DNA of 60,905 bases from Aplysia californica (Eukaryota). Shown one piece after another: positions 3,211 to 60,905 of this stretch. Below the pieces are notes generated by a model that searched no databases, was not told the DNA's origin, and saw only the letters and a list, made by a program, of their open reading frames with translations. Where the stretch lies: contig NW_004798372.1 of the NCBI RefSeq assembly GCF_000002075.1, positions 81,338-142,242 on the forward strand, read 5' to 3'. The position numbers and the translations under genes were made by a program. Every line of letters starts with the position of its first letter. The first letter of the stretch is position 1.

Positions 3211-3433
3211 GTTTATTTTACAGTTATTCCCCTCTATATAAGAACCGCAGATAATTTTTGTTGTTTGTTTTGTGAAGACTAAAATAAAGAAAATTTATTT
3301 TTTATTTTTACACACCAATAACTTTATGGCTTTATTTGCACCCATCAAAATGTTTTTAATCAGCTCATTTGAATTTTTAAAATTCCCTAAAACCAGAAAA
3401 ATTTGCTGCGAACTTTCAATGTATATGGCAACC
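3211..3433. promoter_or_regulatory. Compact bidirectional promoter/5' UTR region shared by COQ6 and FAM161
   Basis: Only about 215-225 bp separate the divergent ATGs (3210 on -, 3425/3434 on +). TSS positions cannot be determined from sequence alone. Confidence 0.6.
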
Positions 3434-6400
3434 ATGGCGTCAACAAGTCACGGTTTGTCTGTGTGGGCAAATGCCTGTGTGAAAAACCCAATTAATCCTA
3501 AAACTGGATTGAGTTCGACGCTTCCAGAGAGGTCAAGGATTTCCATTCGTTTTGATGATGCTCTTAATGAAGTTGAAAGAGCCCGTTTGTTAAATGCGAC
3601 TGTCTCAGGTGACGGTCGTGACTGGGCCCGTGAATCTTTGGAGGGAAAAGATGTCAATTCGAGATTACAAGCTGCAACAGAACAAGAGTTCTATGAAAAA
3701 CTGCAGCAACTTAAAGAGGAAAATAGAAAGACTATCGAAGCATATGATAAACTTTACAAAGAAAAGATTCTTTTGGAAGGAATTCAAAGGGGGCAGACCA
3801 CCACTTTTCAGCCTGATAAATCTGGTGTTGACAGAGAGGTTGAAAATAATGTTCTTGGTCTTGATGGAAGCAATGCTAGGAACAGTGGGCCTGTTACAAA
3901 GAAACCTCCACCTGGTAAACCATGCATTTCTACATCCAATGCACCAATATTCAGTCGGACGGTGACACATCGCTCCGATACTGCCATCAAGTCAGAGCAA
4001 CCGCCCCTTGTGAGATCTAGAAGCCTTGATGAAGGAGACTTGAAATTAGATGGTCTTCCTGTCATGGGAAGTAAAGACAGTGATGATTTTCTTATTCAAG
4101 AGGGCAACATGTCTGAGTATGAAAAGGCTCTAGAGAAAGTAGACAAGCTATGGGAGGATTTTAAGATATCTGAGTACACACAACGAAGACATTCTTTTTC
4201 TTCTAATGAGCGAAAAAGAGACATAGAAAAGAAAGAGAAAGAATGGAGGCATAGAATAACCATACCACAGCCATTTAGTATGTCTATAAGGGAGGCCTTG
4301 AAAGATAAGAAAAAAACAAAGGCACAAGTAGATCTTGAAATCAGACGTCTTGAAAAGCAAAGACTCGAAGAAGAAGAATGTGCAAAGAAGTTCAAGGCTC
4401 AGCCAGTGCCATCGCATGTTTATTTACCCCTGTATGAAGAAATCATGGAAAAAAATGAAACTAGGCGCAAGTATGCTAAAGAGTACTGCCAAGACTTACT
4501 GAAATCTCAAGTGAAGCCTTTTAATTTTGAAATAAGAGAACAGGAGAAAAAAGCGCAAAGGGTGCAGTCTGCTCCTGTCAAGAGACCTGAGAAAAAAGTG
4601 AAGACAACTTTCAAAGCAAAACCAGTGCCAAAGAATGTCTTCAACACTGATGTTGATGAAAAACTAATGGAGGATGAAGAATTGCGAAAAATTCGGGTTA
4701 GAATGAGGGCAAAGGAGCTTCTTAGAGAGTCATCTCTTCCTCCAAATATGGCAGCTCGGGAAAAGTTAAAGGAGCAGCAAAAGAAAGAGGAGGCAAGAAA
4801 AGCAAAAAAAAACGGAATGAAAAAACAACGGCCAAGAAGTGCACATGTTGTGCCAGACTATGATTTGCTCTACAGAGAATTTCAAAAAGAACTTGCCCGT
4901 CGCAAGACCATGAGAGAAGGAACTGTTGTCGAACCTTTTGAGCTTGAGACTGCAAGAATTAGACAATCTAGTCAAGAAAAAATTCAACATGACATAGAGG
5001 AGGATGAACGGCGCCTAAGAGAAGGACGTTGGCCATTCTCCGGTTCAAGGACAACACCAAGAAGTTCAATGAAGTATCTAGGTAAGAATGCAAAATAGTT
5101 TAACTTATGTGATTTCTAGAGTTTTCAAAATTATTTATTCAATGGTGGCAAATGCTTCTAAGAGTGACAGTGAAATTGAAAGTGCTTTCTTCAAGTTGAT
5201 TGTGAGTTGCTTTATACTTTGTCAGAAAGGTGCAGATCTGTGGGTCTTCAAAGTGAATCTGAGTCATGTCTTACAAAATTACAGCTACTTTGGTAGTGCT
5301 AATGGCAGATGCAACATTTTTGTTGCCCTCATGAAGTCTTTTGGGGTGAGCAACTCAACTGTCTACAATGGGCTGCACTTTCCTTCTTCGCTCTGCCATC
5401 GTACTGTTGAAGGCATCAAGTTATAGTGAGATGTTCTTATATTATATCGTTGACTCTTTTATCTTTTCTTAGTAAGATCTCCATTCTCTGACTTGAGACA
5501 GCTTGGTTATAATGACATTGCCGGGAACCACTCTCTGTACTAAAGGTCTTTCAGCTTTCTGATATTAAGATCCCACAGAGTGCTACAATGTACACTTGAA
5601 ATTATCTGAGAGAGCTACCCAGTGTTGAGGAGAAAAGTGGTTGTGCTAGACAGGTGGAGCTTTTGGATTTTGTCATTATAATGTAGAAAAAAATCCAAGG
5701 GCGGAAGTGAGAAATAGTCATTTGCACTGGTAATTGTCTTAGACAGGTGGTAGTTTTAGTAAGTTCAAATGTACATTAGTCTCTATCCAAACTCACGCCA
5801 TACAAAGGCATGCTCTGCTCAAATGCATGCTTTGGTCATTTGACAGGTTTTAAAGAATTATATAACTGAAACTTACAAATGCACAGTAACTACCTCTAAA
5901 TTCACACCTTGATCTGTAAAACATGCGGACAGGTAGAGTTTGACAAATGGAAATTTTTGCTGCATCCTACAAAGCTTGCATAAGACAAATGGATATTTAG
6001 CAAGATAACTCCTCATGCAAAACAAAGAGAGTGATATACAGAGTATTTACACTCAGTTATCAATGGACACAGAAGGATATATATGTTTAGTTTCATGCCT
6101 ATGAACATGATGTGCAACACTTGTGAATGCTGTAGAACACTAGACAGGCCTCTGTAGGATTAAAGTTGATCAAGTGATCAGCTGCTCTGGAAGAATTTAT
6201 GATGTAGGCTACTTCTTCAATGAATAACTAGAGAAAAGTCTCTCAGAATGTCTGATGTCATCCAAGAATTTGCCAAGTTGCAACTGACAGGTAGTCGAGA
6301 GTGGTCGCTTTGAAAGCCACCTGGTTTGCTATAATGACTACTTCCAATAGTGTCCTCTTATCTGTTTTATATTAGTTACTACACATCAGTACAGCGAATC

Positions 6401-51719: not shown

Positions 51720-54700
51720 ATGGATGAAGAAACCCCTCGAAATATCATGACCCAAGCTTTGTTTGGAGACAGTGGAATGCTTAGTGCTGTCGCTTCCCTC
51801 CTGAGACAGCATAATGGCACCAAAGTAAGTGCAGTATAAATTGTTAAAAATAAAAAGGTTCCTGTTATTGACGAAACATGGTTATAAAATTGAGATTGCC
51901 ACTTTTACTGAGCTTTGATTGTGGAATGTTTTGAGTCTTGGATTTTTTATTTTTTTTTGGTATTGTATGACCTTTCATTCAACAGGATTTTCTGTCATGT
52001 CAGCTGTTTTTTTTCCTGCCAACAATCCTGTATTGTCTAGAATCTTCTGCTTTACATTTAGATGGCTTCCTTTTGAAACAGTGATATCAATTGTCAAATG
52101 TAATTTAATAACAATAATAACAGTTCTTTCATCAATGTCTGACAATGACCATAATTATATACCGTCTATAGTCTTTTGGTAAGGCTGCTGGACTCGCAGC
52201 AGGGCGCAGCTTTGAACCCCTATTGGATGCAATGTTGTATCTTTGGGAAAGACTCTTTTAACTCTTTATTAACATTTTTGTTACATCGTCTAAGCAGGAT
52301 GGGTACTTTTTTTAAAGTGAAAGATCATCTAAGCAGGATGGGTACTTTTTTTAAAGTGAAAGATATATATATATATATATATATTGTCAGTCAGTATATT
52401 TTGAGTGTCTGTAAAATGTCTGCTAATACTTCTCAGTGAATACTTCCCAGGACGCTGAAAATGTTTTAGAATGTTATAAGTCTGTCAGGGTAATAATAGG
52501 TTGAAAGTTGGGTAGAGCTTTGTTTCAAATAGGGATATAAAATGCACTTTATATGTGCAATCTATTAAGGTTGTTATTATTCGAATATAAAGCTTCTTTA
52601 TTCTTTTTACAGATATGTTTATAATTAGTGTATCTGCTTTATTGTACATTAGATTAGAGCCTGCAGATATTTAGCAGAACTGTACATCTAATTTTCACCT
52701 TTTTCTTCAGGTAGATGAATAGATGCAAGTAATGCTAAAAGATTAGGTACTTTTTATTAAAGGATTTCATTTTGGTGTACTATTTCTGAACAACTTGATT
52801 TAGATTATAATTATATTTATGTATATATATATGATACCAAAATTCAAACAGGAAAAAGAAGTTCAAATGTCGACGCCTATGTTGGTCCTTACCAGTGTGC
52901 CAGGAAAAGATTCTCTTCATGCGAATGTTGTCCTTGGCTCTGCTCTAGGAAAAACAGCTGGCATGAAACTCAAACCTGATGCGCCAACCTCTACCGAGGT
53001 GAGTGTTGCTTTAGTTGGGTTGTTTTTTTTCTGTTTTTTTCTTTTTGTGTACAGATATTCTCTCTTGAATTGAGATGAAATCCACTCATTCTAATAATCA
53101 TAATGAATAATATATTACTTTTTTATAATTTCTGATGTAGGTTTTTTTTTCTCTGCTGTAGTATTGTAATTTTACATATGATATATATAGAGTTGTAGAT
53201 TATGAATGAGAACGGTTTGTACTCTCAGTTTAGTATCATCTTGAAATGCAACATCTATACATATATAGCATAGAAGTAAAGAAATGGGAGTGGGTGGTTG
53301 GCGGATGCTCTGGTGTGGTTTGCTTCTTCTTTTCTATCAAACGTATATCGTCCTTATCTCCCCTTCTTCTGTTTTATGTTTGTTACTCTTTTGTAACACC
53401 TCTAATCTTCTGGTGCTTAATGACCTTATGCAGTTGCGAGGGCCGTAAAACCCTCGACTAAAACTATACTAAAAGAAATGGGATAGTGCACTGTGGGGAG
53501 GACCTATAGGCAGTAAGCCCATAGCTGTTCAAGTAGCCAAGAAGTGTTGAATGAAAAGCAATTTGGGAACTTCCCAAAAAGTTTCCGTTTTATGACATAA
53601 TAGTTTTGTACCCTTTTCTCTGTTTATTTTCCTAATGTACTGTGAGGAGGTCTTTGGAGTATGGAATAACTGTGTTTATAAGGAGAACTACAGTCTCCAA
53701 CACAATTCATTTGACAGAAGGTTAGATCTATAAGTTGCATTCATCTGAAGGAGGAAAGTGACATTGTGCTTTGATTTTTATTGGAGTGTATCTAAAGACA
53801 GTGATCTATCAGGTTATGTCCCCCTAAAGTGTCTCTCCTCCTTTCTATTCTTCCTATGTCAGTCTTTCTCACTTTTCCTCTTGTAATCTCTCTTCCTCTC
53901 CCTCCCTCTCCATCTTCCTCTTTCTCTCTATGTCAGTCTTTCTCACCCTTCCTCTCACTAACATTATTCATGTACCCCCCCCCCTCTCTCTTTCTGTCTA
54001 TCACTCTCTCTGTCTTCCTCTTTCTCTGTNNNNNNNNNNNNNNNNNNNNNNNNNNNNNNNNNNNNNNNNNNNNNNNNNNNNNNNNNNNNNNNNNNNNNNN
54101 NNNNNNNNNNNNNNNNNNNNNNNNNNNNNNNNNNNNNNNNNNNNNNNNNNNNNNNNNNNNNNNNNNNNNNNNNNNNNNNNNNNNNNNNNNNNNNNNNNNN
54201 NNNNNNNNNNNNNNNNNNNNNNNNNNNNNNNNNNNNNNNNNNNNNNNNNNNNNNNNNNNNNNNNNNNNNNNNNNNNNNNNNNNNNNNNNNNNNNNNNNNN
54301 NNNNNNNNNNNNNNNNNNNNNNNNNNNNNNNNNNNNNNNNNNNNNNNNNNNNNNNNTTTTTACATTGTCCTGTATGTTTTGTCTATAGCCCACTGGCATG
54401 CTATCCAGCCTGGAGGAAGTGCACGCCCTGGCCACAGCGAGCCTCGTGGCCTCCACACAGCGTGACATTGCACAACAGCTGGCACAGGAAGCTGATGGCT
54501 TGGACACGCCGCGCCCGTCCCGTTCGAGCAGGGAGAAGAAGACCAGACAACTGGACCCCCAAGCAAAAAGGATCCAAGTGAGCAAAGGTACATGGATAAG
54601 ACTGGAATTTTATTTTTTTGTTGTTGCTGGATATGATTAAAGTTTTTGTTGGGTCTTCAGATGAAAGCAAGGTTGAAGTGGGCTTTTTTTTTAATGAATG

Positions 54701-57316
54701 AGATAAAGTTTTCAAAACAGTTTTGAAGATAATGAACCATGACTTGGCAAAATGCATTTTTTTTGTTCTGCTTCAAAGACTTATTTTTAACAATTTAGTT
54801 AAGATTATTTAAATTTCTCATTCTGGATTTTTAAAATTTTCTGTTAAGATTATTGTATTTTCTTATCCTCGGCAGCAAAACAAGCAGTATTGAAGACAGC
54901 TGAGAGTAAAGTGACCTCGGAGATGAAGACTAATATTGTGGAGAAGACACAAGATTCTGTGCAGCCAAAAGCTTTAACCTGCTCATTTGAGGGTTGCAAC
55001 CGAAAGTTTGCCTGGCAGAATCACTTAAAGTATCATGAGCTGACTCACACGTACGTATGGACAGAGTGGTGTGGTGTGGGGTAGAGGATTGCATTTCTTT
55101 TCTATTGATTACTTTTGTCTAGTGTCTTGCTTTACCGAGTAAATGAGCTTTATGATTGTGTTTTTGTACTCTTACATAGGGACTTTTGCATCTGTTTCTC
55201 TCTTACAAAACTAATTTATTGTGCTATGTCCAACACAACTGAAATAAAACTCTTGTCAGTTTTCTACTGTAATATTTTGGAAATTAAGTAGCCTCATCTA
55301 AGATACAGATATATCTACATGTTTCTAAGATAAGTTTATCAATGATGGGCCAACTTTAACAATCACATGTGGCTGATGGAATAGTGAAGAATACTTATGA
55401 CAAGGAAGAAAATACAAGATACATATGTGTCATGACGTGGTGGAATCGGGCGCTCGTCAATTTTGGGGCATATGAGGTTATTGGTATCATCTTAAAGCCT
55501 GTTCTTTTGCCTTGCTTTAGGTGAAAACAAATATCCATCTTTGTTGAATAGAAGTGGAAATATTTGCGATTGAGGGAGGTCAGGGTCGCCTAGTTTCAGA
55601 GGTAAAATTAGCGAGAAAATGGCCGCCAAAGTTTGGCAATTTCCATTGATTGAGAGTCCTTGGAAACTAAAAATGTACTTTTTTTGTGCCTTTAATCAAG
55701 GTTTTTCAGTAAAATCCATGGAGAAATGTGTTTTTATGGATGTAAAAGGTGTTAAGCCAAAAACAGAAAATTAGAAAAAATTGCTGAATGGCAAGGAAAA
55801 CGTCAATTTCTTTGATTCCATTATTTTGATGAGCTCCTGATTTCACCACGATGCCTCACATATACTTAAAATCAGTGGGTTGAAGAATGTGGAGTTGGCT
55901 ACAACAAATGGGGGATTGCAAAAAGCGACAACTATCACCAACAATGCCCCCCCCCCCACACACACACACACACACACACTCCAATGTAGGGGGCTCTTGT
56001 GTTCTAAAGGTATGGTGTTCGTCTCACATTCAAAAGGTCTGGGGTTTGAAATCTGTCTGCGGCGAAAAAATGTCCTTCTCTAAAAAAAATTGTCCTCTCA
56101 CGCCTATTTCCTGTTCTCGAGTTCTGTTCTGTCATCTGCTATCATTTCCACCCTCTCCCTTCTTCCACCACTTGCCTCCTCTGGGCTCCTTTCTCCTTTA
56201 CCCATGACCTTTTCTACTGCTACTTCTGGCTTCTTCTTACTATTGTCTTTCAGCTTCCCCTCTAATCTTAGGGTCGGTAAGATCGAACACCTTGCCTTCT
56301 TGAATAAGGATGAAAAATTTCTGAGTCTGAGGTCCCATGTGCAATTGGCACACGTAAAAGATCCGTTGGTGGTCTTAACCCCCGTCCCGCTATGCGCGTT
56401 CATCTACGCGAAGTAGGTCACTGCTCGAATAGCGCTGCGTGCGTACATCTACGCTCGCCGCCTGGCAGGGCGGGAAGCGCGCGAGTGGTAAATCTACGCT
56501 TCTAACCCTGACCTTCTTCAATGGAAAATTACTAATTCTTATTTATAGTAACATGACAACATCTATTACAAGATAGTTTATAAATATCATCCAATCAAAA
56601 TTCAGTTGTTCTTTTCCCGCTAACCTTCGAGATAGCGTCGCGTGGGACGCTGCAACAAGCCCTATTATCTCTTGACCTTTGGTCTGCTTGCTTGCTATCG
56701 GCTATCAGAGAGCGCACGTCCGAGAAAGTAAACACCTCTTTTGTTTTGCATTTTCGCGTTCTTTTTCCAAGTATTTCCAAGTTTAAAGTCATGGAAAATG
56801 ATGGAAGCATTCCTGAAGTGCTTGATTTGAGCAATCCTGACCACCTACGTCTTTTGATGGAGGCAAATGTGAGATATTTTGACCCCCCACTATCGGAGAC
56901 AGAGTCTGCTACTGCTTCCACTTCCAGCAATGTTTCTAGCGCTTCTCCTACTCCAGTGGATAGCTCATCATTGGAGCTTTCGTCACTGGTTGACAGTGAT
57001 TTGGAAGAGGATTTGTCTGAGCCCATCAACCCCCCTACGAGAGAACCTTTATCAGATGATGAAGATGAAACTCAACAAAGTAGCACGGATGAAGAACGGG
57101 GATGGAGGAGAGGTGCAACCAAGCCACCATCATGGGAGTTCAGTGGAACAAGTGGACTGCAGAGAGAGTTGAGTGACCCAACACCCCTTGGCTACCTCAA
57201 GCTACTCATCGACGATGACATGATGCAGAGCATAGTTGATGAAACAAACAGGTAAGTGTTGTGCAGTTTTATGTATAGATCTTAGCTAAAAAAATTGCAG
57301 TGAAATGTCCTTCTAC

Positions 57317-57373
<57 letters not shown>

Positions 57374-60264
57374 TGTGTGTGAGCGTGCGTGCATGCGTGC
57401 GTGCATGCGCGTTTGTGTGTGTGAGTGTGCGTATGTGTGCGTAGGTGTTTCATGCACATAGTGATATCATCAGGTTTTCAGCTGTTATTTGAGAATAAGT
57501 GAGAGGCATGGAAGGAAGGATAAAGTCAAAGAGTGAATATTCAGAGCATGATAACAAAAAATTAATGTGTACAGTAAAGAAAACATACAAATTCAATGTT
57601 ACATACACATCCGCAAATTATTTTTAGCTAAAGTCAAACTAATAGCTTTCTTATTGTTTCTATTTCAGATATGCTCAAACTTCGTTGGCAAACAAGACCC
57701 TTACCCCCAGCTCTCGCTTTCGCAAGTGGACCGATGTGACCCTCGAAACCATGTGGGCTTTCTTTGGACTGATCATCGGCATGGGGCTTATCATCGTGGA
57801 CGACCTTGAAGAGTATTGGTCCACTGACCCAGTCTATGCTCTCCCCCTCTTCCGATCTGTCATGTCAAGGGATCAGTTCAATCTGATTTTATCATATTTG
57901 CATCTCTGCAACAACGCCGACAATCAGCCGCGGGACAGTCCGAATTATGACCCATTATTCAAGATCAGGAAATTTGTTGATGCCTTGAATAACAATTTTC
58001 AGCGGACCTTCCACCCTGGGAAAGACATAGCTATTGACGAAGCTATGGTTGCTTGGAGGGGTAATTTGTCCTTCCGCGTATATAATCCTGACAAGCCGGA
58101 CAAATTCGGAATCAAGGTTTTTCAGCTCTGCGACAGCCAAACTGGGTACTGCAGCAACCTTGAGTTCTACACAGGGAAAAAAGCTCCGTCAGCGAAAGGG
58201 GCAACATTTGATGTTGTGGAGAGGCTCATTAGGCCATATATCAACTGTGGACGCACCCTGTATGTGGACAATTATTATACAAGCCCTGACTTGTTCACGT
58301 ACTTGAAGGAGCAGAGAACGCTGGCGTGTGGCACGATGAGAATAAACCGTAAAAATGGCCCACCCAAAACGATGATCCCGAAGTTGAAGAAAACAGAGAA
58401 GGAGACCGTTGCCCTTACGAACGGAGTGATCACCCTCCTTCGATTTTTTGACAAGCGGGAAGTCAATGTACTTACCACTGCACATGACAACTCTGTAGTT
58501 GACACTGGTAAAGTCAACAGGAGTACTGGAGACCCCATTATAAAACTCCATGCAGTGAATGAGTACAATAAACTCATGGGCGCCGTAGATCGCAGTGATC
58601 AAATGGTGGCGTACAATGCGTTCAAACGCCGTACTCTTAAGTGGTGGAAAAAAGCTTTTTTCCACATGTTCGGGCTCGGCGTCTTGAACGCATATCTTAT
58701 CTATCGAGCCACAACACCAGCAAGGGGCCAGCAATCCCACCGTATTTTTAGGAGAGAGCTTGTGAAACAGCTGGTGTCCCAAGCGCCAGTCGGAAGATCC
58801 CCTGCGTCAAAGTCAGGCAGAGAGCTAGGAGAATCAACAATATTCCGCCTCACAGCTAGGCACTTTCCAACCCCCATCCTCCCAAAATCTGACGCAGCGA
58901 AAAAAAGGAAGCCGCAGAGAGATTGTGCGGTATGCACTGAAAAGGGGAATCGCAAACAAAGTCGATTCGAGTGCACATCCTGCGATGTGGGGCTGCATGT
59001 GCATCCGTGCTTTCAGATCTTTCACACTTGTGTGAATCCTCGACGAGCCTTCAAAAGGCGACATCCTTCGGGAGAGGCCCAGGCTGAGTAGCCTGACTCC
59101 CAAGGCCGACAGATTTGGGAAAGGGGGATATGGGATGGGGTACTGTTACAGTGTAAATTTTCTATGTTGTAGGCCTACATGTTGTGTAATGTATAAGTGT
59201 GGTGGAAATCATTTTTGTGACTGGTGTGTGAATTATTCGTGGATTACTGGTACAGTTTTCTTCAATTCTGTTTTGGATTACCATTGATGTCTGCAGAATT
59301 CTACAGAAAAGGTCAGATTATTTTTGTATTCTNNNNNNNNNNNNNNNNNNNNNNNNNNNNNNNNNNNNNNNNNNNNNNNNNNNNNNNNNNNNNNNNNNNN
59401 NNNNNNNNNNNNNNNNNNNNNNNNNNNNNNNNNNNNNNNNNNNNNNNNNNNNNNNNNNNNNNNNNNNNNNNTTGGCTTTTATGCAAAAGATTTCTTATTT
59501 AGAAAATCATATTTTTTAAAATCATCAAATATATGGGAATACATTTATGTTTTCATATGGGCAATTCAATGCTCTTTAAGAAAATATATAGTTTAGCGGG
59601 GTTTAATAGGATTATAAAGACACAATGAGTAATTTTCTAACACATGGTAGGAATGCTCTATTTTAGCCAGCCACACCCCCATTGTTTTTAGTGGCAACCG
59701 GGAACCGCCCAGTGGAATTATGATAGCGCTTCCGGTTGACCTCGATCGCGGAAGTAGGGTTAAAATTGATAAAAGTAGGCTTTAGCTGCCACGTGGGTAA
59801 AATTCAAAATTAATTCATACCAAAACTGAAAATACTCTTGTCAGTATTAAAAGATAAGAGTACTTTTGAAATTGGAATGTGACTGCCTGAGGGCAAGGAG
59901 CCCTTCTAAGTAGATAAAATGGTCAGTATATGTAAAAATCAGTTGCACACTGCAGGTTGAAGAACCAACAGTCGGCTACCCTTGAGATCTAGCAGGGAAG
60001 GGCAAAGAAGAAGAAAAGTGTGAACATGTTGTGATTTTTCGTGGACTAGCTGGACTGGCTTTGTCTTTGTTTTTATTCTCAGCAATAACCGGCAACACAA
60101 GTGCCCAGTAGAGGCTTGTGACAAAACCTTCTTCACAGCCCAGCGTCTCAATGTACACCTACGGACACACACAGGGGAACGACCGTTTGCATGTTCCCAC
60201 CCAGACTGTGGGAAAAGCTTTACTACGGCGGGGAACCTGAAGAACCACCAGCGTATTCACACTG
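51720..60264 (+). CDS. ZNF410: ZNF410-like C2H2 zinc-finger transcription factor, 5' part (continues beyond window)
   Basis: Predicted exons 51720-51824, 52852-52998, 54389-54587, 54876-55050, 60083-60264 (phases 0,0,1,2,1). Fingers [23 protein letters not shown] / [23 protein letters not shown] / [23 protein letters not shown] match ZNF410 ZF1-3 as I recall them ([27 protein letters not shown]). Motif [19 protein letters not shown] resembles ZNF410 RVQELAHDSLIAATRAQLA. The first two exons are less certain and the N gap at 54030-54356 could hide sequence. Confidence 0.82.
52176..52570 (+). mobile_element. Degenerate family-B SINE with an internal 39-bp tandem duplication
   Basis: Similar to 49366-49730 (TGTATCTTTGGGAAAGAC, GGGTAATAAT.GGTTG, ATAAAATGCA..TTAT); duplicated unit TCTAAGCAGGATGGGTACTTTTTTTAAAGTGAAAGAT at 52289 and 52328. 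Confidence 0.55.
53290..53467 (+). repeat. Dispersed ~170-bp repeat, probable 3' end of a LINE
   Basis: GTGGGTGGTTGGCGGATGCTCTGGTGTGGTTTGCTTC...ACACCTCTAATCTTC...ATGACCTTATGCAGTTG...GCCGTAAAAC; at least five further copies in the window. Confidence 0.75.
55423..55863. mobile_element. ~440-bp MITE (copy 2, opposite orientation)
   Basis: Shares e.g. AGAGGTAAAATTAGCG.GAAAATGGCC.CCAAAGTTTGGC with the reverse complement of 50310-50741. Confidence 0.78.
56791..59091 (+). CDS. piggyBac transposase (PGBD4-like), 627 aa, two exons
   Basis: Exon 1 56791-57251 (acidic Ser-rich N-terminus), intron 57252-57668 (GTAAGT...TTTCAG), exon 2 57669-59091. Splicing restores the conserved ETNRYA motif. Catalytic DDD context IDEAM / VDNYYTS / GAVDRSDQ, C-terminal Cys-rich domain CAVC...[18 protein letters not shown], no stops or frameshifts. 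Confidence 0.92.
57318..57445 (+). repeat. Compound (GT)n/(GCGT)n microsatellite inside the transposase intron
   Basis: Directly visible. Confidence 0.95.
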
Positions 60265-60377
60265 GTAGGAAGCATGTTGCGTAATAGTTATGGGCCTATG
60301 TGGTGGGTGCTTTAGTGTGGTCTATTTGTGCTGTTATTTCTTTCCAGTGTGCCATTCCTGTCCAGTTAAAGTCTTAA

Positions 60378-60905
60378 GGGGATCCGCGGGTCTCGATCCT
60401 CTAGAAAATCGGGTATTTGCTTTAAAAAAAATGGAACTTCGAGTATTTGGATATTCTTACAGAAAAATATGTCAAGAATCTGTTTGTGAAGGTCCCAAAA
60501 CCTAAAGAGACCTCTAATAAATATAAAAATGTATTTGAAAGCGGTAGGGGGGGCAAAAAAATTCAAACAAAATGTCAAGAAATGCTAAACTTTACCCCTT
60601 GACAACAACACTTTCCGTGGCTGCAAGGTAATCAAGTTTGGTATCGTTGGAAAGGCCGTGATAAGAACTATTCGATTATTGCACTTTCATTTTCGTACGG
60701 AACTACTCTGGGGACCCATTTAGGTATGTTTGAAGATCCCGTACCAAATACCGGTTGGCCACTTCCGTCACATGACCGGACCGTGAATTTTCATTCGCCG
60801 AGCCGGTAGCAACGAAGGGGATTCCCCTCGCGGGCCATTGTTTACACTGCGTGCCGAAAGACAGAACGTGAACGTTTTCGCTGCATTTCAAAGAGTTTTC
60901 TATCG
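60378..60905. mobile_element. Probable DNA transposon end (TTAA then GGGG, Kolobok-like) running off the window
   Basis: TTAA|GGGGATCCGCGG follows a partial ~170-bp repeat copy, then CpG-richer sequence; the other end is not visible. Confidence 0.35.

What the first reader, a model, noticed from the sequence alone, without database searches (positions are those of the whole stretch)
55051..60082. piggyBac in a ZNF410 intron is splice-phase compatible with the host: candidate zinc-finger/transposase fusion system
Seen: the host exon encoding ZF1 ends in phase 2 (CAC AC|GTACGT, 55050) and the next host exon starts in phase 2 (60083). The sense-oriented piggyBac between them offers three phase-2 sites. 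(a) Its internal acceptor TTTCAG|A at 57669 gives ...[12 protein letters not shown]..., i.e. ZNF410 N-terminus + ZF1 fused to the whole catalytic core and Cys-rich domain. (b) A long pyrimidine tract ending TTCTTTTTCCAAG|T at 56772 is in frame with the full transposase ([12 protein letters not shown]). (c) Its donor AG|GTAAGT at 57252 can splice to host exon 60083, giving the acidic transposase N-terminus + ZF2 onward. Established: CSB-PGBD3 arises from exactly this intronic exon-trap arrangement. Inference: this may be a nascent host-transposase fusion or an element that modulates ZNF410 dosage. Phase matches can also occur by chance, and acceptor (b) is AAG rather than YAG.
Basis: partly seen in the sequence, partly recalled or inferred. 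Interest (0 to 1): 0.88.

Follow-up and report, generated by a model that had tools for sequence, protein, structure and literature searches.

The report
Young piggyBac transposon in ZNF410 intron
An intact, recently active jumping gene (piggyBac type) sits in an intron of a sea slug's ZNF410-like gene. The host RNA seen splices cleanly over it, so the matching reading frames are best read as a one-in-three coincidence, not as a fusion gene.

Summary
The host intron 55051-60082 is phase 2. It holds a sense-oriented piggyBac-like element (56379-59759, TTAA on both sides). The element's 627-codon transposase gene is split by its own phase-2 intron (57252-57668).

The fusion reading is not supported.
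- Sites (a) and (c) rest on one coincidence: two phase-2 introns, about 1 in 3.
- Site (b) is one of two in-phase AGs among eight, which is what chance gives.
- One RNA contig joins 55050 directly to 60083, the canonical splice.
- No chimeric junction appeared in four runs, but depth on this locus was very low.
- In two polyA RNA runs a few sense reads lie on the transposon and none on the host exons.

The element looks like a live transposon. Its catalytic DDD and Cys-rich domain are intact. It reaches about 6-7 times single-copy depth, nearly identical, in a second individual that also carries this insertion. dN/dS is 0.24 against older broken copies.

The gap (59333-59471) lies 241 nt after the stop codon, so no frame crosses it. 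The genome holds at least 88 piggyBac loci. This scan had already noted similar intronic piggyBacs in MED29, HCF-1 and PLK4 on other DNA of this genome.

Verdict: an ordinary young insertion. A nascent fusion is possible but unproven.

The parts
54876..55050 (+). Host exon A of the ZNF410-like gene. It encodes zinc finger 1 and ends in phase 2 (AC|gtacgt).
   Evidence: translation; the best PDB match is ZNF410 6wmi chain residues 5-32 (ZF1). X19 RNA contig record 1 covers 54874-55050.
55051..60082 (+). Host intron, phase 2, 5032 nt as assembled (gap length is estimated). Most of it is transposon-derived.
   Evidence: the X19 contig joins 55050 to 60083.
55422..55864 (.). Very abundant MITE-like repeat with terminal inverted repeats (CATATGTG...GGTGGAATC / GATTTCACC...CACATATA). 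It is unrelated to the piggyBac.
   Evidence: inverted ends; depth in the hundreds of thousands in DNA run X5, and most of the raw RNA reads laid fall here.
56107..56378 (.). Left half of an abundant interspersed repeat of about 520 bp into which the piggyBac inserted.
   Evidence: in other copies (L014, L015, L010) the two halves are contiguous; those copies read ...GGTGGTC-CTAA/AGAA-AAT... at the site.
56375..56378 (.). Left TTAA target-site duplication.
   Evidence: Copy L002 has TTAA + CCCCCGTCCCGC next to a different flank.
56379..59759 (+). piggyBac-like transposon. Its ends are 5'-CCCCCGTCCCGC ... GCGGAAGTAGGG-3' (CCC...GGG, 8 of 12 inverted match).
   Evidence: boundaries from the repeat flanks and other copies; ends; about 6.4 times single-copy depth in X5.
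56709..56772 (+).
   Evidence: 8 AGs, 2 in phase; the tract is conserved in L002 only as much as its surroundings, and is absent upstream of the ATG in relatives L021 and L022.
56791..57251 (+). Transposase exon 1 coding part (153 codons + 2 nt).
   Evidence: aligns to residues 7-147 of the intronless homologue P0003.
57252..57668 (+). Spliceosomal-type intron of the transposase gene, 417 nt, phase 2, GT..AG, with a (GT)n/(GCGT)n microsatellite. There is an in-frame stop 1 nt into it.
   Evidence: exon 1 stops at P0003 residue 147 and exon 2 starts at 149; both splice sites are kept in the 88% copy, and the acceptor in the 79% copy; the intron sequence is found only inside this family. Splicing itself was not seen in RNA.
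57669..59091 (+). It holds the DDE_Tnp_1_7 core with D at codons 58036, 58267 and 58588, the Cys-rich C-terminal domain, and the stop at 59089-59091.
   Evidence: PF13843, 3.5e-81; PF13842. (piggyBat 9c0f 4e-62, piggyBac 6x67 5e-37; IDE / VDNYY / VDRSDQ aligned). (positions).
59333..59471 (.). Assembly gap inside the element's 3' non-coding region. It was not filled.
   Evidence: L003 is collinear on both sides; both sides are at multi-copy depth.
59760..59763 (.). Right TTAA target-site duplication.
   Evidence: X5 record 14 bridges 59759/59760 with 288 and 66 letters.
59764..60015 (.). Right half of the interspersed repeat that was split by the insertion.
60083..60264 (+). Host exon B. It starts in phase 2 and encodes ZNF410-like fingers 2 and 3.
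   Evidence: 6wmi residues 34-93, gapless. X19 record 1 is contiguous with exon A.

Best explanation
This is a young, structurally intact, probably autonomous piggyBac-like DNA transposon. It inserted by ordinary cut-and-paste at a TTAA inside an older interspersed repeat, which lies in the intron between the ZF1 and ZF2 exons of a sea slug ZNF410 orthologue.

The element belongs to a recently active family. Its transposase gene carries its own phase-2 intron, so it must be spliced to make the 627-aa enzyme.

The host gene removes the whole 5-kb intron, transposon included, and makes normal ZNF410 mRNA. The phase compatibility with the host is a coincidence. If host-transposon chimeric RNAs exist at all, they are splicing noise.

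Shown: element boundaries, target-site duplication, intact domains, family copies, the canonical host splice, and presence of the insertion in a second individual.

Inferred: current activity, splicing of the element's intron, and no function for the host.
For: Element identity:
- TTAA on both sides and the split of a repeat that is contiguous elsewhere.
- PF13843 at 3.5e-81 plus the Cys-rich domain.
- Alignment to piggyBat and piggyBac structures with the three catalytic Asp motifs kept.
- The exon model is collinear with the 612-aa intronless homologue P0003, residues 7-147 and 149-607.

Recent activity:
- The element's depth in DNA run X5 is 310-330, against 47-52 for its unique flanks. Only 4 differences from the window copy are reported.
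- A 99.8% identical 524-bp 5' fragment lies on C73, and a 99% fragment on C774.
- dN/dS is 0.24 against the frameshifted 88% and 91% copies, so the lineage stayed under selection for transposase function.

Host splicing and RNA:
- The X19 RNA contig (2128 nt, depth 12) runs 54874-55050 straight into 60083-66. No unique intron sequence is covered.
- Raw polyA runs X21 and X22 have 0 reads on the host exons. About 6 reads each lie on the element, all in one direction.
- No chimeric joint was reported.

Insertion in a second individual: X5 unitigs and contigs cross both insertion junctions, at single-copy depth on the left, on a haplotype with 7 flank differences.

Background:
- The genome holds at least 88 piggyBac-related loci.
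- No annotated protein at 90% identity or more, stand-alone or fused, exists among proteins of 260-828 aa.
Against: - The splice sites offered are strong. CAG|GTAAGT is a perfect donor, and a 17-of-20 pyrimidine tract precedes CAG|A. Some chimeric splicing is therefore mechanistically plausible.
- RNA depth on this locus was too low to exclude minor isoforms. There were zero host-exon reads in the raw runs, and only one RNA contig set.
- Only 15 of 61 joints were printed by read laying.
- Splicing of the element's own intron was not observed either.
- Activity of the element is inferred, not tested.
Confidence: 0.85

Rival explanations
1. Nascent host-transposase fusion by exon trapping, the reader's route (a). 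ZNF410 pre-mRNA splices from 55050 to the element's internal acceptor at 57669 and ends in the element's 3' UTR. The product is ZNF410 N-terminus + ZF1 + transposase residues 155-627, comparable to CSB-PGBD3.
For: - The element is in sense orientation, in phase, with a strong acceptor.
- Capture through transposon-borne acceptors is an established route (bioRxiv 10.1101/2020.05.07.082677; PMC3902484).
- X19 holds low-depth contigs on exon 2.
Against: - No 55050|57669 joint was seen. X19 has zero depth over 57560-57743, which includes the acceptor.
- The X19 exon-2 contig carries 58408A, the allele of the X5 multi-copy contig, not the window copy's G. That RNA therefore cannot be assigned to this locus.
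- There is no canonical polyA hexamer between the stop and the element's end in the readable sequence.
- ZF1 alone cannot confer ZNF410 specificity (bioRxiv 10.1101/2020.08.31.274324).
- The product would lack the first 154 residues of the transposase.
- No such protein is in the database.
- The element is young and multi-copy.
Confidence: 0.06
2. The element modulates ZNF410 output through routes (b) and (c). One form is a 480-nt in-frame cassette exon (56772-57251) between ZF1 and ZF2. The other is a transposon-promoter transcript joining the acidic transposase N-terminus to ZF2-5. Either would give altered or dominant-negative ZNF410.
For: - Both joins are in frame, and 56772-57251 is 480 nt with no stop.
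- The donor at 57252 is a perfect consensus.
- Human ZF2-5 still binds DNA in EMSA (bioRxiv 10.1101/2020.08.31.274324).
- PolyA reads lie on exon 1 in X21 and X22.
Against: - The acceptor is AAG, with no conservation beyond background.
- X19, which has the host mRNA at depth 12, has zero depth over the whole of exon 1.
- No 57251|60083 joint was seen.
- In X21 and X22 the host exons have no reads at all.
Confidence: 0.03
3. Assembly artefact. The piggyBac, which contains a gap and belongs to a near-identical multi-copy family, was wrongly placed in this intron by the scaffolder.
For: - There is a gap inside the element.
- The assembly holds fewer near-identical copies than read depth implies.
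Against: - In the independent DNA run X5, a contig crosses the right junction (288 + 66 letters).
- A unitig at single-copy depth 49.8 runs from the unique flank 55988 through TTAA to 56404. That is 30 letters = k-1 into the repeated part. It falls under the tool's 31-letter rule, but it is the expected unitig end.
- A TTAA duplication flanks the element exactly where a repeat is split.
Confidence: 0.03

Closest known systems
piggyBac-like elements (PBLE) of animals, e.g. T. ni piggyBac, bat piggyBat, and the Aplysia californica AcaPBLE listed by Bouallegue et al. 2017 (PMC5381638)
   Same: TTAA target duplication, CCC...GGG ends, the DDE_Tnp_1_7 core with three catalytic Asp, a C-terminal Cys-rich domain, and a multi-copy family with broken older copies.
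   Different: - The transposase gene is split by a 417-nt intron with a microsatellite.
- The closest relatives in other sea slugs (62-65% identity) are single uninterrupted ORFs.
- The terminal inverted repeat is short and imperfect (8 of 12).
- I could not test whether this is the published AcaPBLE, because no supplement is held.
CSB-PGBD3 (primate ERCC6 intron 5) and other host-transposase fusion genes such as KRABINER
   Same: A sense-oriented transposon in a host intron with transposon-borne splice signals in a compatible phase. This is the first step of the three-step birth model (PMC3902484; bioRxiv 10.1101/2020.05.07.082677).
   Different: - In PGBD3 the acceptor lies upstream of the whole ORF, a polyA site follows it, the fusion RNA and protein are documented, and the copy is fixed and conserved for over 43 My.
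- Here the strong acceptor is inside the gene, no canonical polyA signal is readable, and no fusion RNA was seen.
- The copy here is young, mobile-looking and one of several.
Human ZNF410 (PDB 6wmi), the five-finger activator of CHD4
   Same: - Exons A and B are the best and collinear match to ZF1 and ZF2-3.
- The spacing of the DNA-contact residues named in the paper is kept: W..H..Y in ZF1, QR in ZF2, T..N..N in ZF3 (reading against bioRxiv 10.1101/2020.08.31.274324).
   Different: - Only three of the five fingers lie in the window.
- Orthology rests on PDB matches, not on a tree.
- The function in molluscs is unknown.

Membership tests
piggyBac superfamily transposon (PBLE) | TTAA target-site duplication at both ends | tested here: met
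   TTAA at 56375-78 and 59760-63. Paralogous copies of the split repeat have a single CTAA or AGAA there. Copy L002 also starts TTAA|CCCCCG next to a different flank.
piggyBac superfamily transposon (PBLE) | Terminal inverted repeats of about 12-19 bp (CCC...GGG) | tested here: inconclusive
   The ends are CCCCCGTCCCGC and GCGGAAGTAGGG, with only 8 of 12 positions complementary. The 3' end is seen in this copy alone, because L002 and L003 are truncated.
piggyBac superfamily transposon (PBLE) | DDE_Tnp_1_7 transposase core with the catalytic Asp triad | tested here: met
   PF13843 at 3.5e-81. IDE, VDNYY and VDRSDQ align to the same motifs of piggyBat 9c0f. Assigning these as D268/D346/D447 equivalents rests on established knowledge of T. 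ni piggyBac.
piggyBac superfamily transposon (PBLE) | C-terminal Cys-rich domain | tested here: met
   PF13842 at 1.1e-4, just under the cut-off. The C-x2-C...C-x2-C...H...C...H pattern aligns with piggyBat.
piggyBac superfamily transposon (PBLE) | Mobility: several copies at different sites | tested here: met
   Copies on C208, C699, C73, C763 and C774. About 6.4 times single-copy depth in X5. Actual transposition was not tested.
Host-transposase fusion gene (CSB-PGBD3 type) | Transposon in a host intron, same strand, compatible phase | tested here: met
Host-transposase fusion gene (CSB-PGBD3 type) | Splice acceptor just upstream of the transposase ORF, and a polyadenylation site after it | tested here: not met
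   Upstream there are only an AAG and a CAG with a poor tract. The strong acceptor is internal, at 57669. There is no AATAAA or ATTAAA between 59092 and 59759 in readable sequence, though the gap could hide one.
Host-transposase fusion gene (CSB-PGBD3 type) | RNA evidence for the chimeric junction | tested here: not met
   Only 55050>60083 was seen, in X19. No chimeric joint was reported in X21, X22 or X19. Depth was very low, so minor isoforms are not excluded.
Host-transposase fusion gene (CSB-PGBD3 type) | Fixed orthologous copy kept by host-level purifying selection | not testable with these tools
   No related mollusc genomes can be searched by synteny here. The insertion is shared by two individuals only. 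dN/dS of 0.24 is between paralogous transposon copies and says nothing about host selection.
ZNF410 orthologue (host gene) | Tandem C-x4-C C2H2 fingers collinear with ZNF410 ZF1-ZF5 and with its base-contact residues | tested here: met
   6wmi is the top hit for exon A, covering ZF1 residues 5-32. It matches exon B without gaps over residues 34-93. ZF4-5 lie beyond the window and were not examined.

The most novel reading that the evidence does not exclude
The insertion is the first step of a host-transposase fusion caught in a mollusc while the transposon is still mobile. In some tissue, possibly germline or neurons, a meaningful share of ZNF410 transcripts would splice into the element's internal acceptor, or its exon 1 would splice to ZF2. 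The product would be a ZNF410-transposase chimera or an N-terminally replaced ZNF410 with an effect on the host.
Probability: 0.06. Interest if true: 0.6.

Novelty: new member of a known kind. Interest (0 to 1): 0.22.

Why it matters
As a fusion candidate it matters little. Nothing beyond a one-in-three phase match supports it, and the host mRNA seen is normal.

The element itself has modest value.
- It is an intact, intron-bearing piggyBac family with several near-identical copies, so it is a plausible currently active transposon in a neurobiology model sea slug. It could be tested as a native gene-transfer tool.
- Its closest relatives are intronless, so it is a clean case of intron gain inside a transposase gene.

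With the other intronic piggyBacs this scan noted in the same genome, it could also serve as a young, unselected baseline when asking how often such insertions yield chimeric RNA.

Tried and rejected
- Inverted-repeat search of the intron. It found only microsatellite pairs and no clear long TIR. Boundaries came instead from other copies and from the split flanking repeat.
- Looking for the element's 3' end in copies L002 and L003. Both are truncated or rearranged after about 59313 and 59517, so the 3' terminus is known from this copy only.
- Protein database search with exon 2. No protein at 90% identity or more, so no annotated stand-alone or fused product. The best hits are 62-65% identical sea slug piggyBacs.
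There is none.
- Intron as an independent repeat or introner. Rejected, because the sequence is found only in this family.
- Supplement of PMC5381638, to identify AcaPBLE. It is not held.
- Raw polyA runs X21 and X22 gave no reads on the host exons, so they could not test host junctions.
- Domesticated PGBD gene. Rejected, because the ends and TTAA are intact and the family is multi-copy and near-identical.
- Not done, by rule. Each exon was searched by reference on its own.
- Species. The assembly size and contig number match my memory of Aplysia californica AplCal3.0, and an earlier scan note calls it a sea slug. No tool here confirmed the name.
Full report
OBSERVATION

I read 54700-60905 and translated the pieces.
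- Host exon A is 54876-55050. It encodes ...[25 protein letters not shown] and ends AC|GTACGT, phase 2.
- Host exon B starts at 60083 after ...ttattctcag. It encodes [16 protein letters not shown]...HQRIHT and ends at about 60264.
- The canonical junction codon is ACC (Thr).
- Between the exons lies an ORF starting at ATG 56791. It ends CAG|GTAAGT with the last exon base at 57251, and resumes after ...ctatttcag| at 57669. It runs to a stop at 59089-59091.

THE GAP

The N run 59333-59471 starts 241 nt after the transposase stop codon. No reading frame and no proposed junction crosses it. Its only consequences are that the intron length is approximate and that a polyA signal or splice site could be hidden there.

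Both sides belong to the same element.
- Copy L003 matches up to 59332 and again from 59472 in the same order and strand.
- Both sides are at multi-copy depth in DNA run X5, and contigs run into the gap from both sides.

I did not read or use any letters for the gap.

WHAT THE HOST GENE IS

- Exon A's best PDB match is human ZNF410 (6wmi) finger 1, chain residues 5-32.
- Exon B matches the same chain at residues 34-93 without a gap, covering fingers 2-3.
- Pfam finds C2H2 fingers.
- The contact residues named for human ZNF410 keep their spacing: W232/H235/Y238 in ZF1, Q264/R265 in ZF2, T292/N295/N298 in ZF3 (bioRxiv 10.1101/2020.08.31.274324).

'ZNF410-like' is therefore well founded. Only fingers 1-3 are in the window.

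WHAT THE INSERT IS

Exon 2 matches Pfam DDE_Tnp_1_7 at 3.5e-81 and the piggyBac Cys-rich finger. It also matches the solved piggyBat (4e-62) and piggyBac (5e-37) transposases. The IDE, VDNYY and VDRSDQ motifs that hold the catalytic aspartates are aligned and intact.

The exon model is validated by the 612-aa homologue P0003 from another sea slug.
- Exon 1 aligns to its residues 7-147 and exon 2 to 149-607.
- The missing residue is the split codon AG|A.

The boundaries come from the rest of the genome.
- The sequence left of 56378 and right of 59761 is the two halves of an abundant repeat of about 520 bp. The halves are contiguous in other copies.
- At the join those copies read a single CTAA or AGAA, where the window has TTAA-[element]-TTAA.
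- The element is therefore 56379-59759, with a TTAA duplication and CCC...GGG ends.
- The inverted repeat is short and imperfect, 8 of 12 positions.

AGE AND ACTIVITY OF THE FAMILY

In the assembly this is the only intact copy.
- C208 (88% identical) and C699 (91%) have frameshifts and stops and are truncated at the 3' end.
- C763 (79%) and C201 (about 65%) are older fragments.
- A 524-bp 5' fragment on C73 is 99.8% identical, and an 80-bp piece on C774 is 99% identical.

In DNA run X5, a different sample from a different year, the evidence points to several almost identical copies that the assembly largely lacks.
- The flanks carry 7 differences from the window.
- The element lies at word depth 310-330, against 47-52 for the unique flanks. 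That is about 6.4 times.
- Only four differences from the window copy are reported.

dN/dS of exon 2 against the two old copies is 0.24, with dS 0.30-0.41. This is the usual sign of a transposase lineage kept functional. It says nothing about host selection.

Both splice sites of the internal intron are kept in the 88% copy, and the acceptor in the 79% copy. The intron sequence occurs nowhere else in the genome. The closest relatives abroad, P0003 and P0001, are single uninterrupted ORFs. The intron is therefore a family-specific gain.

IS THE INSERTION REAL, AND IS IT SHARED?

In X5 a contig bridges the right junction with 288 and 66 letters. On the left, a unitig at depth 49.8 runs from 55988 through TTAA to 56404.
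- It enters the repeated part by exactly k-1 = 30 letters.
- That is one short of the tool's 31-letter rule, but it is the expected form of a unitig end.
- It does not break at 56378, and it has the same depth as the flanks.

I therefore infer that this second individual carries the insertion, probably on both chromosomes. This rules out a misassembly and a private insertion. It does not show fixation.

RNA EVIDENCE (the one call allowed)

X19 behaves as RNA: exons are joined and the unique intron stretches have no cover.
- Its 2128-nt contig, at depth 12, runs 54874-55050 directly into 60083-66. This is the canonical splice.
- The same run has short low-depth contigs (depth 2-10) on 56391-56489, on parts of exon 2 (57756-58661) and on 59204-59332.
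- It has nothing on exon 1, on the 57669 acceptor or on any chimeric join.
- Its exon-2 contig carries 58408A, the allele of the X5 multi-copy contig, not the window's G. That RNA therefore cannot be assigned to this locus.

The two raw polyA runs (X21, X22, about 15 million reads each) gave less.
- They have no read on either host exon.
- About six reads each lie on the element, on exon 1, exon 2 and the 3' UTR. All are in one direction, which for a stranded library means sense transcripts.
- Transposon RNA thus exists where host-exon RNA is not detected.

No chimeric joint was listed. Caveats: depth is very low, only the best 15 of 61 joints were printed, and the element's own splice was not seen either.

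CHANCE

Sites (a) and (c) are the acceptor and donor of one intron. Both are compatible for the single reason that this intron and the host intron are phase 2, roughly 1 in 3, times 1 in 2 for orientation.

Site (b) is one of two in-phase AGs among eight in the last 99 nt (56692-56790) of the open leader, where 2.7 are expected. It is an AAG. It is not conserved beyond its surroundings, and it has no counterpart in relatives.

The genome holds at least 88 piggyBac-related loci. This scan has already noted sense intronic piggyBacs in MED29, HCF-1 and PLK4 on other DNA of this genome. One such phase match is expected.

WOULD THE PRODUCTS MAKE SENSE?

- Route (a) keeps only ZF1. In human ZNF410 that finger makes only van der Waals base contacts, and at least three to four fingers are needed for binding (bioRxiv 10.1101/2020.08.31.274324). 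Route (a) also drops 154 N-terminal transposase residues.
- Route (a) needs polyadenylation inside the element. The readable 3' UTR has no AATAAA or ATTAAA, only weak variants. The first ATTAAA is at 59846, in the flank.
- Routes (b) + (c) together would make a 480-nt in-frame cassette. Route (c) alone needs the element's promoter.
- None of these has RNA support.

COMPARISON WITH THE KNOWN

As an object, this is a piggyBac-like element. Every defining feature is met except a clear TIR, which is inconclusive.

As an arrangement, it equals step (i) of the host-transposase fusion model, insertion into a host gene (bioRxiv 10.1101/2020.05.07.082677).

It differs from CSB-PGBD3 (PMC3902484) in these ways:
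- There is no acceptor upstream of the ORF.
- No polyA site is readable.
- No fusion RNA was seen.
- It is not a fixed old copy.

It should not be filed as a fusion gene. PiggyBac elements of Aplysia californica are already listed in the literature (AcaPBLE, PMC5381638). I could not check whether this is the same family.

VERDICT

This is an ordinary young insertion of a probably active, intron-bearing piggyBac into a TE-rich intron.

| Reading | Confidence |
|---|---|
| Ordinary young insertion, no fusion | 0.85 |
| Real fusion or modulator, both routes together | about 0.09 |
| Misassembly | 0.03 |

Interest is 0.22.

Noticed in passing
window 57252-57668; L021 3001-4839; L022 3001-4779: The transposase intron is a family-specific gain. 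Three diverged copies in this genome carry it. The closest relatives in other sea slugs (62-65% identity) are single uninterrupted ORFs. The intron sequence occurs nowhere else in the genome.
   Followed up: partly
window 55422-55864: A MITE-like repeat with inverted ends of about 25 nt, at enormous copy number (word depth in the hundreds of thousands in DNA run X5). It is strongly represented in polyA RNA, mostly on one strand, and accounts for nearly all raw reads laid on the stretch.
   Followed up: no
window 59816 and 56348 (run X5, table 5c): One single-copy-depth DNA contig joins 59816, then 7 other letters, then 56348. That is a go-back joint spanning the whole piggyBac plus short flanks. 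It is either a chance match in the abundant flanking repeat or a tandem duplication that the assembly collapsed.
   Followed up: no
window 56391-56489: RNA-run contig (X19) and raw polyA reads (X21) lie within about 12-110 nt of the element's left end, upstream of any expected promoter. This could be read-through from a flank, a start site at the terminus, or DNA carry-over.
   Followed up: no
L004 (G000:C73:240479-244002), locus 1501-2028: A 524-bp 5' terminal fragment of the same element, 99.8% identical. It breaks off inside exon 1 into unrelated sequence, and its end reads TTAA-A-CCCCCG, one extra A compared with the window copy.
   Followed up: partly
window 3272-5098 (+): A 608-codon open frame with a FAM161A/B domain (PF10595, 7.7e-59). 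It is a large exon of a neighbouring gene upstream of the ZNF410-like gene, in line with the scan's microsynteny note.
   Followed up: partly
window 54910 and 58408: 54910 A>G is a synonymous Lys in host exon A, seen in both X5 DNA and the X19 RNA contig. 58408 G>A changes Val to Ile in the transposase, and A is the allele of the X5 multi-copy contig and of the X19 RNA contig.
   Followed up: no
G000, 88 places listed: At least 88 piggyBac-related loci from many families. Many have open frames of 400-770 codons without stops (e.g. C102:253425-254825, C1390:38193-39572, C280:811432-812781). The genome is unusually rich in potentially intact piggyBac transposases.
   Followed up: no
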